DNA of 64,000 bases from Saccostrea echinata (taxonomy: Eukaryota). The position numbers were made by a program, and so were the translations under genes. Shown here piece after piece: positions 31,370-36,749 of this stretch (its first letter is position 1; each line of letters begins with the position of its first letter). The DNA is taken from NCBI RefSeq assembly GCF_033153115.1, contig NW_026889803.1:1612001-1676000 (forward strand), in the 5' to 3' direction. The notes beneath the pieces were generated by a model. It was not told the DNA's origin. It saw only the letters and a program-made list of their open reading frames with translations, and ran no database searches.

Positions 31370-31712
31370 AAATTAAAGGACACAGTGACCTTGAAATAGG
31401 TCACGACACACCTTCTACCTAATATGCATAAATTGACCAAGTTTGATGATTCCAAGTCTTATAGTTTTCTAGTTAAGAGCCGGACAGGATTTTTCCATAT
31501 TTGGCCATAGCATCTTAATTAAAGGTCAGAGCGACCTACTTTCAATGTGCGACACACCTTCTACCCAAGAAGTATCAGCTGACAAAATTTGATAATCCTA
31601 GGCCTAATAGTATTAAAGTTATGAGCTGGACACGATAAAAGCTAACAGACGGACGGACGGACATGAACGTCAATAACATAATATGTCCCGTCTAAAGACA
31701 GGCGTATAAAAA
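31370..31712 (-). mobile_element. Helentron/HINE fragment (second copy at about 36366-36680)
   Basis: Internal repeats GACACACCTTCTACC..AAGTTTGAT..TAATAGT, a (GACG)n microsatellite and a terminal hairpin CCCGTCTAAAGACAGG followed by TATAAAA. Confidence 0.6.
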
Positions 31713-32503
31713 TGATCAGGTAGGGTAAGGCTGATTTTAATGGGTCAGTCAGAGTACATTATTTGAACAAATCATTTTCTATTGTTGGCCTAGGGTCCAA
31801 TTTTCTTGGTTTGAGAAATAATATTGGTCATGAGGATTTGAATTCCTTGATGAAGACATACTGTAATCTAACATTTTGTGGAGGACATGAATTCATGGTT
31901 CTCAGACTCTTTATACCATATAAACAATGACCCCCCCCCCCCTCAAAAAAAATAGTGATTTAACAGCATTTTAACAGGGACCTTTAGAAAATTCACTTTG
32001 ATTACACTTTATATAAAAATCTGTATATACCAGTACAAATAAATGGAAAATAGTAACAAGTTTTGCATCAATGAATTTATTGAGAGATTGTTCTTTTATA
32101 CATAAAATTAAAAAAGTGTAAGATATAAAAATTTGCATCTCAAGATAATTAAATTATTTTAAAAATATACATTTCCATTTCTTATTAGTCCTAAAGTGTT
32201 CTTCATCTACATCATTAAAATAACACACAAAAATGTGTGCAAAAAAAGGATAAACTATAAGACAACACAAATATTGATAATTGTGCTAAGTTTCTGACCA
32301 TTCATGGCATTGTATCACAAGATTTTTTGTTACACTTCAGAATACATGTACTACACTGTAACAACCTGTTGGTATTTGAAGTATGAAAGCTATAAACATA
32401 AAAAATCCTGATTAAGCAATCAAAAACTTTCATGTATCTGTTTTCTTTGTAGAAGTCATGTTCATCCTTTACATCAAATATGCAATATACCAAATTTCAG
32501 CAA

Positions 32504-35496
32504 TTATTTCCCTTCAAATATTGATTTGACCGGGGAAATAAAATAAGTGTCCAATGTCTCCCAGAGATTCTTCCCAAAGCTCAGTCTTCCTACACCAGAT
32601 TTCTTATCAGAATCAGGTTTTGACATCTCCTGAAGTTTAATGTCCTCGGCAATTTCTTCCCTTTCAATTAAATGTCGGTCTTTGACCGGAAAATCAACAC
32701 TGTTAAACCTGCTCAATGGTATCAAAGATGCATTCACATTTTCCCTCTGTCCTTTTAATTCTAATCCAACTTGTGGACTTGGAAATGAGTCTTTGAAATT
32801 TAAATGCTGCGTCACATCACTAGGTGGATCAATAAGAGAACTTTCCAAACTAGGGAGATTCAAAAGAGGGGCATCAGTGCCCTTGTACAAGTTAAGTCCC
32901 TTTTTATGTCTGCATGACTGTTCAAGAACAGATACATTTACAGTTGTGTTACAACTCTTTTTAGACTTCTTCAGTGCTGTGCCCAGAATATCTGCAACTT
33001 GTCCATCTTCCTCTTCCACTATATTTAATGTTGTGTGGAAGGACTTGCCCATTTGCACTGACTTGTCGCCTTTCCCTGCGTATGTTTTTTCCAGGAGAGA
33101 ACTATCATTTTCTCTGATTCTTTTTTTGGCAGACATTTCTGTGAGAACATTAAGAGGAATGTCTCCAGAGGTATTAAGGTGAGTTTCTGGTGATTGTACA
33201 ACAACAAATCTAGTTCTATCCAGCCAGTCTCCATTGGATTCTGGTTTCCTTTTTGTCCTTTTTCTTTTTTTTCTTGCGTGATTGTTTCCATTTCCTTCGA
33301 CGGAATCACCGTGCTCATCCTCAAAATCTGAAGAGGTCACATTCTGTTCAATGCTTGGTTTCTTGATAGCCCTTCTTCCTTTTTTTCTGGGGTGATGCTT
33401 TTCAGTATCAGTATCTCTGTTTTCATCCTCAGAAGATGAGGTGACATTCTGATCAAAGCTCAGTCCAGAAGCTCTCTCTTCATGTGACCTCTGTCTTAGA
33501 TTTCTCTTTGGTTTCCTTTGGCGAGATGGAATGCATCTGAGAGGCTGTTTCTGTTTTCTTAATATTGATGAATATCTTGTTCCACTCTGACTTCTTACAT
33601 CCTCCATCGGGCTTTGCTCCTCTGAAAGCTGGCTGCTTCTATTTTGGACCCTCCTTGAACTTCTTGTGCTGGATTTTTGAGTTGTATTATTATCTTCCAG
33701 TACACAATGATCTGTATCTTTTCCCTGAACTTTTAAGTAGCTTTTCTTACATGTCAAAGTAACTTCAAATAAGAATGGATACACCTTCAGTATTTTTCCA
33801 TTCTTCTTAAATGTTATTTTTTGAGAAATTTTCCATGGTTTTCTGTTAAAGGTCACAACAAAATGTTTGCTGCAAACAGTCTTGAGAATTTGATTTCGCT
33901 GAGACAGGTATATTAATCCTCTCAGTACTTTGTCAATATCTTCTGCGGTTTCTGAAAATAAAAAATGAATTATTTACCAAGTGGCTAAAAATAAAATCTG
34001 AATTATCTTCAATATTCTTCAACCAGGGACCCATTTCATAACTTACACTAAGACCAATAATTTTAGCTCTTACCTACCTTATACTATTCTCAAATGAGAG
34101 GTCCATGGGCCACAATGCTCACCTGAGAAACTTTAGTCTTGCTGTTCCTCCTCAGATTTTTAAAAGATTGTTAAATTCCCATGAAAAATTTTGACCCCAT
34201 ATTATGCTCTAAAAGGACTCTGAATTTAATCCACACATCATGGTTATGCTTCAATATGGCCTTGCAGTTATGGAGCAGAAAATTCTTTTCCTTTATACAG
34301 ATATACCAGCATTATGTAAAATATAATCCTGATTTAAGTCAACTAAGTGAACTCTTATCCAGGATCCATAATTTGAAAAAAGTTGATTCCACACAACTTG
34401 GGAATGTTTGCAAATCAATGGTTCTATTGTGGTTTTTTGAGATTTTCAATAAAAAAAAGTTTTTATAGTCCCATGTAAAACTTTGATCCCCCTGGGGCCA
34501 TGATTTGAACAATTTAGAATATAACTACCTCAGGAAGCTTTCACATAAGTTTCATATTTTCTGGTTTAGTGGGACTTGAGATTTTTTCCCCCTATATATT
34601 TCTATGTAAACATTTCATTCCCTACTTCGGCCCCATCCTAACCCTGGGGAATTGATTTGAACAAATTAGAAACTAAGCTACCTTACAAAGCTTTCACTTA
34701 AGTTGCATCTTTTCTGGCCCATTATTCTTAAGAAGAAATTTTTTTTAATGATGGTTGACCCTACCCTATTTTGCCTTTTCTTGATTATCTCCCCTTGGAA
34801 GGGGGATTGGCCCTTCATTTGAATAATTTAGAATATCCTTTACCCAAAGATGCTTTGTGTTAACTTTAACAACTTTAAAATTGACCCAGTGCTTCTTGAG
34901 AGGAAGTCAAAAACATGGCCGTAGGAACGGGGGGGGGGCATGGGGGGGCTGTGCCCCCCAATAATTTTGCCGATTTATATAGATTACTATAGTAAACTTA
35001 GATACTTTATGCTTGTGCCCCCCAAAAAAAAAACGTCTGATAACCCTTCTTTTTTTTTTTGCTTGTCAAGGAATTTTTGGTAGTTGATGCCCCCCCCCCC
35101 CCTTTTTTTTTTTTTTTTGCTTGTCAGGAAATTTTTGGATAGTGTCCCCTCAACTGTCAACTGAAAATATATGGCTGTGCCCCCCCCCCCCCCCCAAACT
35201 GAAATTGCTTCCTACGGGCCTGAAAAATGTGAAAAGTTTACAGATGGATGGATGCTGGACAAGGGGTGATCAGAAAAGCTCACTTTAAGTTTTCAGCTTA
35301 GGTGAGCTAAATGTATTTTTACAGAGTCTTACAAGTTTTTTTTCAAATTACTTAAAAGAAGAAAATACTAACCTTTTCCAGTGAGAAATTGATTTAAATT
35401 TCCATCACAACAGTTAGATTCATGGCAATGAAATAATTTTGTTTTGTACAAATGGTCCACATGCAAGATCAGCTTTGTTTTATCGTCAGCAGCCAT
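32504..35496 (-). CDS. MAJIN: MAJIN-like (membrane-anchored junction protein) meiotic telomere-nuclear envelope protein, ~523 aa (exons 35496-35373, 33951-32504)
   Basis: Spliced N-terminus MAADDKTKLILHVDHLYKTKLFH...GKETAEDIDKVLRGLIYLSQRNQILKTVCSKHFVVTFNRKPWKISQKITFKKNGKILKVYPFLFEVTL. It aligns by eye with the human MAJIN N-terminal domain as recalled (ETRFLHAGPNVYKFKI...TQELEDSVRVVL...EHFIVFPYKSKWERVSHLKFKHGEIILIPYPFVFTLYV). The phase-1 GT-AG intron fits. The gene model is solid; the orthology is inferred. Confidence 0.7.
34092..35311 (-). mobile_element. Helentron/HINE-type non-autonomous element filling most of the MAJIN-like intron
   Basis: Ends GAGGTCCATGGGCCACAATGCTCACCTGAG and GTGATCAGAAAAGCTCAC..TCAGCTTAGGTGAGCTAAA (subterminal GCTCACCT inverted repeat), with degenerate internal tandem units. 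It is the same family as 53436-54371. Confidence 0.8.
34914..35222. mobile_element. Poly-G/poly-C MITE with a 5-bp TSD AAAAA, nested in the Helentron
   Basis: CATGGCCGTAGGAA ... TTCCTACGGGCCTG, with AAAAA on both sides. Removing it restores the host GAAGTCAAAAATGTGAAAAGTTTACAGA (compare about 54281-54305). Confidence 0.75.
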
Positions 35497-36749
35497 TTCC
35501 TGAAAATACATACAAAAGAAGCTTTAATAAATTAATATTACAAGTCACATCTTTGCGTGCTTTAAATAAACGAAGGGGCTAATCAGCATGCACTGAATAA
35601 ACAAAGCCGCTAGTCCATCTTGCCTCTGCTAGGCATATTCATTTATTTTTGCAAGGAAAAAAAGGGCATGGCGCTGGAAAAAAGGGCATGGCGCTGCGCC
35701 ATGCTAGTTTGCTTTAGATTTAACACTATCAAGACTTTTTAAATTATCATTATTGTACCTGTTGTAATAGCTGACATGGATTCTACACTACTGAAATGGA
35801 CAGGGATTTTGACAGCAGTAGATATAGATAGGTATAGAACTACTATTGCACTTAAATACTGACTATGGATAAAACTTCCATTTAGTCTTAAAGTTGCTGG
35901 TATGTTGAACAACAGGATGGCTTATATCTATAACAACAACAATTCAAGTAACTGAATTACTTTTTCACTTGAGAAGACGCAAGCCAAAGGAACAAGATGA
36001 GTTTGTGAAACACTGATGCCCCTGTATGACAGCTCATAACAAAGGCTGAAGTTTCTCAAATGCAAGTCAAGCTCCGAAGTCAAAAATCAAGAGATCAAAA
36101 ATGTTGGTACATAAAAGAAAGATGCTTAAAAAATTAAATTACCTATCTAACTCTTCTTGACATGTTTCATTAGATATTTATATTGTGCACTTATTAACAG
36201 CAAATTCCAAACTAAGCATCTTATTTGCAAATAAAATGATTTTTTTAATGCATTTTCTTTAAAAAAATACAAAAAAATTCATATAAAATAATTAAGAGCT
36301 AATATTAATCTTTCCATGCTGAAACCAGATCCATTAAATAAAATCTTGGTGTAGCATTCCTCCTTAAGTAAGATGTGACACACCTTCTACCTAAGAGGCA
36401 TTAATTCGCAAAGTTTGATGATTCTAGGTCTAATAGTTTTCTAGTTACGGGCCAGATAGGATTTTTCCATATTTGGCCATAGCATCTTAATTAAAAGTCA
36501 CAGAGAGACCTATTTTTTTAGGTGTGACACACCTTCTACACAAGATGTGTCAGCTGACAAAGTTTGATAATTCTAGGCCTAATAGTATTAAAGTTATGAG
36601 CGGGACACAGAAAAAGCTAACAGACAGATGACCGGATGCCAAAACAAAATACATCCCGTCTTAAGACAGGCATATAAAAATCACACTTTGATGCAGTAAT
36701 AATTAAGAGCTCGCAGTGTCGAGCGGCACATTACACCACAAGCTATTAA

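What the first reader, a model, noticed from the sequence alone, without database searches (positions are those of the whole stretch)
32504..35496. Hidden MAJIN-like meiotic telomere-attachment gene, about twice the mammalian length
Seen: the anonymous 450-aa ORF extends through an acceptor at 33952 to a 41-codon upstream exon, giving 523 aa. The first ~105 aa carry T-x9-YKxK, a helix, HFVV, W-x6-FKK and YPFLF in the same order and near-identical spacing as the MAJIN N-terminal TERB2-binding domain (comparison from memory). Known: MAJIN acts in the TERB1-TERB2-MAJIN complex that tethers telomeres to the inner nuclear membrane in meiosis, and invertebrate homologs are very divergent and often unannotated. 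Inference: this is the mollusc ortholog with a greatly expanded disordered middle region.
Basis: partly seen in the sequence, partly recalled or inferred. Interest (0 to 1): 0.78.

Follow-up and report, generated by a model that had tools for sequence, protein, structure and literature searches.

The report
Oyster MAJIN homologue without membrane helix

Summary
The minus-strand model (coding exons 35496-35373 and 33951-32504) gives 523 aa. It is identical to a public protein, 'uncharacterized protein LOC133205161 [Saccostrea echinata]', so the gene is unnamed, not hidden. Contigs of 4 of 4 runs laid carry the 35373/33951 joint with GT..AG ends.

On its own the protein only grazes Pfam MAJIN (17.8 bits, cut-off 27). 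A profile of 29 mollusc relatives hits only the human MAJIN crystal chains in the PDB copy (E 3e-16, full core). The oyster-only profile joins that family at 99.8%. No SLX4IP sequence signal was found. The gene is single-copy in this genome.

There is no transmembrane helix in this protein or in any stored relative. Instead, 22 of 35 family sequences share a ~65-aa C-terminal module: an acidic DRHxIExEE...KLQ helix, a basic cluster and an amphipathic LW...[ST]PxK..F tail. That module has no known relative.

Mollusc MAJIN candidates were published in 2020 (PMC7227075). This is a TM-less variant of a known family. The meiotic role is inferred, not shown.

The parts
35373..35496 (-). First coding exon: ATG at 35496, 41 codons plus the first base of a split codon; donor GT at 35372-35371. 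Encodes the first strands of the MAJIN-type core, including T7-x9-YKxK.
   Evidence: 41/41 identical to P0001; this exon alone matches family-profile positions 10-44 at a genome-wide E of 9.9e-4; contigs lie on 35373-35501.
35497..35501 (-). 5' untranslated letters of the same exon, preceded by a cag acceptor at 35502-35500 (the exon edge is ambiguous by 1-2 letters). At least one non-coding exon lies further upstream, outside 31500-36500.
   Evidence: sequence. table 8: X1 record 1 has 42 letters, X3 record 20 has 31 and X2 record 15 has 60 that do not lie on the stretch upstream of 35501/35500.
33952..35372 (-). Intron of 1421 bases with GT..AG ends, holding interspersed repeats and homopolymer runs.
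   Evidence: table 5 (joint 33951/35373, 'skips 1421', seen in 4 of 4 runs)..
33610..33951 (-). Start of the large terminal exon, encoding residues 42-~155. It holds the rest of the beta-grasp core (to about residue 113: helix, HFVV, W81, FKK, YPFLF) and the start of the linker.
   Evidence: residues 63-107 against MAJIN chain 63-107. (Pfam MAJIN profile 62-191)..
32696..33609 (-). Linker, residues ~156-460: Ser-, Lys- and Arg-rich with low model confidence. The first half (116-280) has net charge +13, with basic clusters RKKGRR (230) and RKKRKRTKRK (268). The second half (281-460) is 55-67% conserved among the oyster sequences other than S. cucullata (83-84% with that one) but was not detected outside them, apart from Lottia.
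   Evidence: composition, identity by region. (alignment). (Atlas model mean pLDDT 0.38). (P0013 aligned over profile 6-502).
32507..32695 (-). C-terminal module, residues 461-523. It comprises an acidic helix-like motif DRHLIEREEIAEDIKLQEMSK (466-486), a short linker, and the amphipathic tail LWETLDTYFISPVKSIF carrying the protein's only [ST]-P-x-[KR] site (S514). There is no transmembrane helix.
   Evidence: near-invariant in 8 oyster sequences. (module in 22 of 35 family sequences). (Kyte-Doolittle 19-window maximum of 0.25 in the last 40 aa).. (no known relative).
32059..32506 (-). Stop codon (32506-32504) and a 3' UTR of about 445 nt. AATAAA lies at 32081-32076 and the transcript ends near 32059.
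   Evidence: sequence. table 8 (X1 record 1 ends at 32059 with 8 further letters).

Best explanation
This is the single-copy Saccostrea member of a mollusc-wide family that descends from MAJIN.

Shown:
- It is a transcribed gene with at least three exons that encodes 523 aa.
- Residues 1-~113 are homologous to the MAJIN beta-grasp core.
- A basic, Ser-rich, poorly ordered linker follows.
- The protein ends in a conserved bipartite module instead of a transmembrane helix.

Inferred mechanism:
- As in mammals, the core is completed by the C-terminal peptide of a TERB2 partner through beta-strand addition.
- The core, together with the basic linker, binds telomeric DNA without sequence specificity.
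- The long flexible linker spans the distance to the nuclear envelope.
- Attachment to the envelope cannot be by an integral helix. I propose it runs through the C-terminal module. The basic cluster plus amphipathic LW...[ST]PxK..F tail would lie on the inner nuclear membrane or dock on the nucleoplasmic N-terminus of a SUN protein. The acidic DRHxIExEE...KLQ helix would be a second protein contact.
- The S514-P-V-K517 site would be a possible CDK switch. This parallels the CDK2-sensitive SUN1-MAJIN contact reported in mouse.
For: Gene and transcript.

Homology chain:
- An oyster-only profile (A2, 4 sequences) searched against 1.84 billion representatives found 37 proteins at E <= 1e-3. Examples are Patella P0010 at 1e-20, Lottia P0013 at 1.2e-12 over profile 6-502, P0022 at 3.7e-9 and P0033 at 2.1e-6.
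- P0022 (44.8 bits) and P0033 (37.8 bits) pass Pfam MAJIN's 27-bit cut-off.
- 18 of 29 family members hit PF15077 at E <= 0.01, and no other family was hit.
- The 29-sequence profile hits only three PDB sequences at E <= 10, all human MAJIN. The best is 3e-16, profile 1-113 against chain 3-110.
- hhalign of oysters against non-oyster members gives 99.8%, E 5e-28, over residues 4-113.

Fold: the ESM Atlas model of residues 1-125 has a chordate MAJIN cluster as its nearest structural neighbour, at TM 0.60.

Single copy: the only matches in the 923-Mb assembly are these two exons.

Basic linker. Human MAJIN linker basic patches enhance DNA binding (PMC6297230, passages read).

C-terminal module: conservation; amphipathicity (muH 0.55-0.80, mean hydrophobicity about 0).

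Literature: the SUN1-MAJIN contact is weakened by CDK2 inhibitors and its sites are unknown (PMC7509418, passages read). TERB1, TERB2 and MAJIN candidates are reported to co-occur in Mollusca (PMC7227075, section 5 read).
Against: - P0001 itself is below Pfam's MAJIN cut-off (17.8 bits against 27). Its direct hits to the MAJIN chains are not significant (E about 1). The oyster-only profile found nothing in the PDB copy. Membership therefore rests on a two-step chain.
- There is no TM helix: the Kyte-Doolittle 19-residue maximum is 0.57 in the whole protein and 0.25 in the last 40 aa. None of the 45 stored sequences reaches 1.6.
- The human dimerisation aromatics F73/Y75 align with T75/N77 (with PMC6297230). 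Of the six human basic-surface residues only the YKxK pair is clearly kept.
- No convincing TERB2 was found in this genome. There were three hits with E 0.99-3.6. Two of them look like noise, and one is a lead at the profile's C-terminal end.
- The tissue of the four runs is not known to me, so meiotic expression is untested.
- The close Crassostrea-type relative P0003 stands for 460 member sequences from run assemblies. That would be many for a strictly meiosis-specific transcript, though the tissues are unknown.
- The structural neighbour list ranks SLX4IP (TM 0.59) level with MAJIN (TM 0.60).
Confidence: 0.62

Rival explanations
1. It is a MAJIN-fold protein that no longer works, or never worked, as a membrane tether. 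It would be a soluble chromatin or DNA-repair adaptor in the manner of SLX4IP. The beta-grasp would capture a partner's strand, as SLX4IP does with XPF, and short conserved motifs in a long disordered tail would recruit other factors.
For: - There is no TM helix in any family member.
- The architecture (N-terminal beta-grasp, long disordered region, short conserved C-terminal motifs) resembles SLX4IP. SLX4IP has an N-terminal 122-residue beta-grasp and is called a structural homologue of MAJIN (PMC12804970, passages read).
- The Atlas structural neighbours give SLX4IP TM 0.59 against MAJIN TM 0.60.
- No separate SLX4IP-like gene was seen in this genome. PF15744 gave one weak hit in a low-complexity ORF of unknown kind.
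- No TERB2 was found.
- A close relative stands for many run-assembly copies.
Against: - The sequence signal is to MAJIN only. PF15744 was not hit by P0001 at E <= 10, nor by any of 29 members at E <= 0.01.
- The PDB profile search returned MAJIN chains only. I could not verify that the PDB copy holds a SLX4IP chain.
- The YKxK, HF[IV]V, W-x7-F and YPF[LV]F positions line up with MAJIN without gaps.
- PMC7227075 reports no MAJIN paralogues in metazoans.
Confidence: 0.25
2. It is a true MAJIN orthologue whose C-terminal tail is the direct counterpart of the vertebrate 'TM' segment and still inserts in the membrane, as a weakly hydrophobic tail anchor or hairpin. In that case nothing differs mechanistically from mammals.
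For: - PMC7227075 (section 5 read) reports moderate conservation across taxa in the stretch that harbours the TM, and a predicted helix there.
- The tail sits at the extreme C-terminus, as in a tail-anchored protein.
- The Elysia relative P0043 has a more aromatic version of the tail with no acidic residues in its core (FKFWQFFSQFL), with muH 0.80.
- From recall only and untested: the human TM segment also ends with a P-hydrophobic-basic-x-hydrophobic-F pattern.
Against: - The hydrophobic stretch is only about 16 residues long, is broken by a proline, and contains two or three acidic residues in most species.
- Mean hydrophobicity is about 0 and the Kyte-Doolittle window maximum is <= 0.81 in the last 40 aa of the full-length members.
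- Pfam's MAJIN model did not match four tails tested at E <= 10. HMMER is weak on such short stretches, so this counts for little.
Confidence: 0.12
3. It is a chance ORF or an annotation artefact with no function.
For: None beyond the weak single-sequence Pfam score.
Against: - Spliced contigs are present in 4 of 4 runs.
- There is a canonical poly(A) signal.
- Orthologues are conserved across bivalves, gastropods and Liolophura, which I recall to be a chiton.
- The core and the C-terminal module are under clear constraint.
Confidence: 0.01

Closest known systems
[quoted passage not shown]
   Same: - The N-terminal ~113-residue core is the same length and carries YKxK, HF[IV]V, W-x7-F[KR] and YPF[LV]F in the same register.
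- The family profile hits human MAJIN at E 3e-16.
- The core is followed by a poorly conserved basic linker (PMC6297230).
- The gene is single-copy, as reported for MAJIN (PMC7227075).
   Different: - It has 523 aa, against a protein whose TM ends at about residue 251 in mouse (PMC7227075).
- It has no transmembrane helix.
- It has a ~65-aa C-terminal module not covered by the Pfam model.
- The human dimer-interface aromatics F73/Y75 are not kept.
- P0001 itself is below Pfam's cut-off.
- The coding sequence lies in two exons.
SLX4IP (Pfam PF15744, UPF0492), the XPF/SLX4-binding adaptor
   Same: - It has an N-terminal beta-grasp of about 120 residues that PMC12804970 describes as a structural homologue of MAJIN.
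- The Atlas model of this protein aligns to a SLX4IP cluster at TM 0.59.
- It has no TM helix and a long disordered remainder.
   Different: - There is no sequence-level match at any threshold tried.
- The conserved motifs of the core follow MAJIN, not SLX4IP.
- The C-terminal module has no counterpart that I could detect.
Mollusc MAJIN candidates of da Cruz et al. 2020 (PMC7227075)
   Same: That paper reports PSI-BLAST MAJIN homologues in Mollusca, Annelida and Brachiopoda, with similarity mainly in the N-terminus. Very probably it is this same family.
   Different: - The species and accession lists are in supplementary tables that I could not open, so I cannot say whether any oyster sequence is there.
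- The paper reads the C-terminal stretch as a potential TM helix. My hydropathy counts do not support an integral helix in molluscs.
- None of the 15 named clusters I looked up (of 30), nor the two named Saccostrea proteins, is called MAJIN in public annotation.

Membership tests
MAJIN (PF15077) | N-terminal beta-grasp core homologous to human MAJIN residues 1-112 | tested here: met
   The family profile hits 6gnx_A at E 3e-16 over profile 1-113 against chain 3-110, and only MAJIN chains are hit. Oysters join the family at hhalign 99.8%, E 5e-28. The nearest Atlas structural neighbour is a MAJIN cluster at TM 0.60.
MAJIN (PF15077) | Score above Pfam's gathering cut-off (27 bits) | tested here: not met
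   P0001 scores 17.8 bits, E 0.0033, over profile 62-191 only. Relatives P0022 (44.8 bits) and P0033 (37.8 bits) do pass. 18 of 29 members hit at E <= 0.01.
MAJIN (PF15077) | C-terminal transmembrane helix anchoring the protein in the inner nuclear membrane | tested here: not met
   The Kyte-Doolittle 19-residue maximum is 0.57 in the whole protein and 0.25 in the last 40 aa. None of the 45 stored sequences reaches 1.6. The tail has mean hydrophobicity about 0 and muH 0.55.
MAJIN (PF15077) | Basic flexible linker after the core (DNA-binding patches BP1/BP2 in human) | tested here: inconclusive
   Residues 116-280 have net charge +13, with clusters at 230 and 268. This is composition only; DNA binding was not tested.
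MAJIN (PF15077) | Aromatic dimer interface (human F73, Y75) giving the 2:2 MAJIN-TERB2 complex | tested here: not met
   By the ungapped alignment (chain numbering is residue number + 2), these positions are T75 and N77 in the oyster. The family consensus there is V-t-p-k-k-k-p-W.
MAJIN (PF15077) | Binding of the TERB2 C-terminal peptide | not testable with these tools
No convincing TERB2 was found in the genome.
MAJIN (PF15077) | Meiosis-specific expression and telomere/nuclear-envelope localisation | not testable with these tools
   Spliced contigs show transcription, but the runs are coded and their tissues are unknown to me.
MAJIN (PF15077) | Single copy, with no better candidate in the same genome (orthology) | tested here: met
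   A six-frame search of the 923-Mb assembly with PF15077 found only this locus. The same search with the family profile found only its two exons. Sensitivity is exon by exon, so a gene made of very short exons could be missed.
SLX4IP (PF15744, UPF0492) | Sequence match to the family model | tested here: not met
   P0001 gave no hit at E <= 10. 0 of 29 family members hit at E <= 0.01. The own-genome search gave one weak hit elsewhere, in a low-complexity ORF of unknown kind.
SLX4IP (PF15744, UPF0492) | N-terminal beta-grasp fold of the MAJIN/SLX4IP type | tested here: met
   The Atlas structural neighbour is a SLX4IP cluster at TM 0.59, with 98 residues aligned over 6-112. The fold is shared with MAJIN, so this does not discriminate.

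The most novel reading that the evidence does not exclude
In molluscs, MAJIN is not an integral membrane protein. The ancestral or lineage-specific way of fixing the meiotic telomere complex to the nuclear envelope would then be a peripheral, regulatable contact. That contact would be made by a conserved bipartite C-terminal module: an acidic DRHxIExEE...KLQ helix, then a polybasic stretch and an amphipathic LW...[ST]PxK..F tail that carries a CDK-type site. The vertebrate transmembrane helix would be a later hardening of that tail. This would make the SUN-MAJIN contact, not membrane insertion, the conserved core of the attachment.
Probability: 0.3. Interest if true: 0.6.

Novelty: new variant of a known kind. 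Interest (0 to 1): 0.42.

Why it matters
**Annotation.** It gives a name and a testable function to a gene that public annotation leaves 'uncharacterized' or misnames. This holds in all 15 named mollusc clusters I looked up (of 30) and in the two named Saccostrea proteins. Misnamed examples are 'myb-like protein X' and 'serine/arginine-rich splicing factor 4-like'.

**Biology.** It extends the TERB1-TERB2-MAJIN story to a farmed bivalve group, where meiosis and triploid sterility have practical weight.

**Open question.** MAJIN is defined as membrane-anchored. The mollusc proteins keep the core but have no membrane-spanning helix, and have a different, strongly conserved end. If that end proves to be the envelope contact, it would show which part of the tether is ancient. 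It would also offer a short peptide to probe the poorly understood, CDK-sensitive SUN1-MAJIN link.

**Caveat.** The identification itself is not a surprise. Mollusc MAJIN candidates were reported in 2020.

Tried and rejected
**Searches that gave nothing**
- Single-sequence searches were too weak. Pfam scored 17.8 bits, PDB phmmer gave E about 1, and the oyster-only profile against the PDB copy found nothing.
- Two word-index searches meant to fetch named non-mollusc MAJINs failed. The alignment A4 returned only its own members plus an 81-aa fragment. P0022 residues 1-120 returned only itself. I therefore have no vertebrate or other non-mollusc full-length MAJIN in hand. I could not align C-termini across phyla or build a MAJIN/SLX4IP tree.
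- TERB2 (PF15101) in the own genome gave three weak hits. Two read as noise on translation. One is a 33-aa frame at the profile's C-terminal end and is a lead only. I fetched part of the upstream region (10,000 of the 18,000 bases asked for) and did not pursue it.
- SLX4IP (PF15744) in the own genome gave one weak hit, in a Ser-rich low-complexity ORF of unknown kind that does not look like SLX4IP.
- The C-terminal module had no match in Pfam, the PDB copy or the ESM Atlas. One search gave no feature hit, and the structural rows were mixed and mostly under TM 0.5.
- The search of earlier findings returned nothing relevant.
- Paper searches: 'MAJIN'+'oyster' listed 9 papers, none on this gene. 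My five-term search was badly set, because min_terms 2 let in papers without MAJIN, and it says nothing. 'SLX4IP'+'MAJIN' listed 1 paper. 'MAJIN'+'TERB2'+'metazoa' found 22 papers, 15 listed.
- I saw no paper describing a TM-less mollusc MAJIN or the DRH...KLQ motif.

**Rejected**
- Chance ORF: rejected.
- SLX4IP orthologue: rejected on sequence.
Full report
**1. What is in the sequence**

On the minus strand the tool lists a 450-aa ORF at 32504..33856. Its frame stays open upstream of the tool's GTG as far as a stop that lies just before a pyrimidine-rich ...ttttcag acceptor. The AG is at 33953-33952, so the exon begins at 33951.

About 1.4 kb further upstream an ATG at 35496 opens 41 codons. 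These end in a split codon at a G|GTTAGT donor, with the last exon base at 35373.

I searched the two exons separately, and did not join them. Exon 2 alone recovered a public protein, P0001, at 100% identity over 100% of the query. P0001 has 523 aa and is named by NCBI 'uncharacterized protein LOC133205161 [Saccostrea echinata]'. Exon 1 is 41/41 identical to P0001 residues 1-41. The gene is unnamed, not hidden. Saccostrea echinata is an oyster of the family Ostreidae.

**2. Is it transcribed and spliced as claimed?**

A search for runs holding 32400-35600 listed five holders with 0.41-0.50 of the sampled words, all kept as contigs and guessed to be RNA. That share is about the exonic share of the stretch.

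I laid four of them (3 samples, 2 studies) on 31500-36500.
- All 4 of 4 have one contig with the joint 33951/35373. It skips 1421 letters, with ends CT..AC on the plus strand, which is GT..AG on the gene's strand.
- One 2072-letter contig of run X1 lies on 32059-33951 and 35373-35501 with no differing letter.
- That contig, and contigs of X2 and X3, carry 31-60 further letters upstream of 35500/35501 that do not lie on the stretch. They break off at a cag acceptor. So at least one non-coding 5' exon lies further upstream.
- The 3' end near 32059 sits 17 nt after AATAAA at 32081-32076.

Contigs cannot give expression level, and the runs' tissues are coded. Transcription and the junction are shown. 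Gonad or meiotic expression is not.

**3. Is the N-terminus MAJIN-like?**

Taken alone the evidence is thin but points one way.
- The only Pfam family reported for exon 2 or for P0001 at E <= 10 is MAJIN (PF15077). It scores 17.8 bits, E 0.003, below the 27-bit cut-off, and covers profile positions 62-191.
- The only PDB sequences reported are three human MAJIN chains at E about 1. Residues 63-107 align without a gap to chain positions 63-107.
The tryptophan-to-FKK spacing is x7, not x6, and human MAJIN also has x7.

To get beyond single-sequence reach I took three steps.
- I built an oyster-only profile (A2: P0001-P0004) and scored it against 1.84 billion representative proteins. It found 37 proteins at E <= 1e-3 and 12 at <= 1e-10. 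Most match profile positions about 4-140, which is the N-terminal domain. One hit, P0038, is a cysteine-rich repeat protein and looks spurious; I left it out.
- Scanning 29 family members one by one against Pfam gave PF15077 for 18 of 29 at E <= 0.01 and no other family. P0022 (44.8 bits) and P0033 (37.8 bits) are above the cut-off, and P0014 (26.8 bits) is just under it.
- A profile of those 29 sequences (A3) hits exactly three PDB sequences at E <= 10, all human MAJIN. The best is 3e-16, over profile 1-113 against chain 3-110, which is the whole crystallised core.

The oysters belong with the rest. hhalign of A2 against 13 non-oyster members (A4) gives 99.8% probability, E 5e-28, over residues 4-113. 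Exon 1 by itself matches family-profile positions 10-44 at a genome-wide E of 9.9e-4.

The ESM Atlas holds its own model of this protein. For residues 1-125 its nearest structural neighbours are a chordate MAJIN cluster (TM 0.60, 102 residues) and a chordate SLX4IP cluster (TM 0.59, 98 residues).

**4. MAJIN or SLX4IP?**

A 2025 cryo-EM study describes the N-terminal 122 residues of SLX4IP as a beta-grasp. It calls SLX4IP and MAJIN structural homologues that bind partners by beta-strand addition (PMC12804970, passages read). Structure does not separate the two here. Sequence does.
- The SLX4IP family PF15744 is not reported for P0001 at E <= 10.
- It is not reported for any of 29 relatives at E <= 0.01.
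- No SLX4IP chain appears in the PDB profile search. I could not verify that the PDB copy contains one.

**5. One gene or several?**

Six-frame searches of the 923-Mb assembly gave two results. PF15077 found only this locus. The family profile found only this gene's two exons, at E 1.7e-86 and 9.9e-4. So there is no second MAJIN-like gene at that sensitivity. That fits orthology and the 'no paralogs' statement of PMC7227075. A canonical gene split into very short exons could escape such a search.

**6.

Mammalian MAJIN is a core, then a poorly conserved linker of about 120 aa with basic patches, then a well-conserved 19-aa transmembrane helix (PMC6297230, passages read). In mouse the TM lies at aa 232-251 (PMC7227075).

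The oyster protein has no such helix.
- Its best Kyte-Doolittle 19-residue window is 0.57, inside the core.
- The best window in the last 40 residues is 0.25.
- None of the 45 proteins stored at that point reaches the usual 1.6.

Instead, the last ~63 residues are the best conserved part after the core: 81-95% identity among oysters, against 21-42% in residues 116-280 outside the nearest species.

The same module recurs across the family. [quoted passage not shown] - 19 carry the module and served as seeds;
- 3 more were found by the model (P0018 at 40.4 bits, P0033 at 20.2, P0041 at 19.0);
- 13 show no hit. Several of these are obvious fragments, and they include all the named heterobranch gastropods (Elysia, Aplysia).

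The tail is amphipathic, with muH 0.55-0.80 and mean hydrophobicity about 0. It holds the protein's only [ST]-P-x-[KR] site, S514. The P and K are constant across the family, and the S/T usually is.

The module has no detectable relative in Pfam, including the C-terminal part of the MAJIN model. It has none in the PDB copy or the ESM Atlas.

**7. The middle**

Residues 116-460 are Ser-, Lys- and Arg-rich. Residues 116-280 have net charge +13, with basic clusters at 230 and 268. The Atlas model of the whole protein has mean pLDDT 0.38. 'Disordered and expanded' is fair.

Residues 281-460 contain blocks that are invariant among eight oyster sequences. I did not find these blocks outside oysters, apart from Lottia P0013, which aligned over profile 6-502.

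**8. Differences inside the core**

The PDB chain numbering is residue number + 2. Using the ungapped alignment, the human dimer-interface aromatics F73 and Y75 correspond to T75 and N77 in the oyster. Mutating those two residues in human MAJIN gives a 1:1 complex (PMC6297230). The family consensus also lacks them. Of the six human basic-surface residues mutated in that paper, the YKxK pair is clearly kept. The 2:2 architecture therefore cannot be assumed.

**9. Range and names**

I looked up 30 clusters. Of these, 15 carry a source name (6 of 10, 7 of 10, 2 of 10). By their names all 15 are molluscs: bivalves, gastropods and Liolophura, which I recall to be a chiton. This rests on my own knowledge of the genera; only Saccostrea echinata was looked up.

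None is called MAJIN. Thirteen are 'uncharacterized' or 'hypothetical'. One is 'serine/arginine-rich splicing factor 4-like' and one is 'myb-like protein X'.

PMC7227075 (section 5 and passages read) reports PSI-BLAST MAJIN homologues in Mollusca, Annelida and Brachiopoda, with similarity mainly in the N-terminus. It also reports 'moderate conservation' and a predicted helix in the TM stretch.

**10. Partner**

Pfam TERB2 (PF15101) gave three sub-threshold hits on three different contigs of the own genome. Two translate to noise with stops. The third is a 33-aa frame that ends in a stop and matches the profile's C-terminal, MAJIN-binding end (positions 175-205; 18.4 bits; genome-wide E 0.99). 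It is a lead, no more.

**11. Reading**

*Shown.* This is a transcribed, single-copy gene with at least three exons. Its product has a MAJIN-homologous core, a basic disordered linker, and a conserved non-TM C-terminal module shared across molluscs.

*Inferred.* It acts as the MAJIN of the mollusc meiotic telomere complex.
- It would bind TERB2 by strand addition and bind DNA through the core and linker.
- It would reach the nuclear envelope through its C-terminal module, not through an integral helix.
- The likeliest contact is the nucleoplasmic part of a SUN protein or the membrane surface.
- The mouse SUN1-MAJIN contact is weakened by CDK2 inhibitors, at unknown sites (PMC7509418, passages read). 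That makes the conserved [ST]-P-x-K in the tail worth testing.

I give 0.9 to homology with MAJIN and about 0.6 to the full functional statement. The main rival (0.25) is a soluble, SLX4IP-style adaptor built on the same fold.

**12. Verdict**

Its core inference is largely right, which is notable for a comparison made from memory. The identification is not new in kind, since mollusc MAJIN candidates were published in 2020, and the gene was already modelled.

The part worth a second look is the loss or absence of the transmembrane anchor and the conserved replacement module. Interest: 0.42.

Noticed in passing
window 12508-13881 (-): A 457-aa ORF matching reverse transcriptase RVT_1 (E 1.3e-18, profile positions 101-204 of 205). 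It is a retroelement fragment, probably non-LTR judging by the sequence after the RT domain.
   Followed up: partly
window 34005-34840, 34930-35200, 35174-35340 (intron) and 35842-36175 (upstream): Interspersed repeats. There are long G, C and A homopolymer runs, and stretches on which many unrelated contigs of all four runs pile up with loose ends and false joints (tables 2, 5 and 7). The repeat family was not identified.
   Followed up: no
G000:C2:11935692-11935784 (+), locus L003:1501-1593: A 33-aa open frame ending in a stop gives the best own-genome match to Pfam TERB2, at the profile's C-terminal MAJIN-binding end (positions 175-205; 18.4 bits; genome-wide E 0.99). It is a possible last exon of the oyster TERB2. 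No upstream exons were sought.
   Followed up: partly
P0021, P0043, P0046 (Elysia) and P0035 (Aplysia): The named heterobranch gastropod relatives keep the MAJIN-type core but gave no hit to the C-terminal module model. Elysia chlorotica P0043 ends in an aromatic-rich amphipathic stretch (muH 0.80). That stretch looks like a more hydrophobic version of the tail.
   Followed up: partly
P0003 cluster (close oyster relative, 515 aa): The cluster holds 460 member sequences. The 40 read came from run assemblies, on contigs of about 2-3 kb, which is transcript size. This suggests the orthologue is picked up in very many RNA runs of a well-sampled oyster. The tissues are unknown.
   Followed up: no
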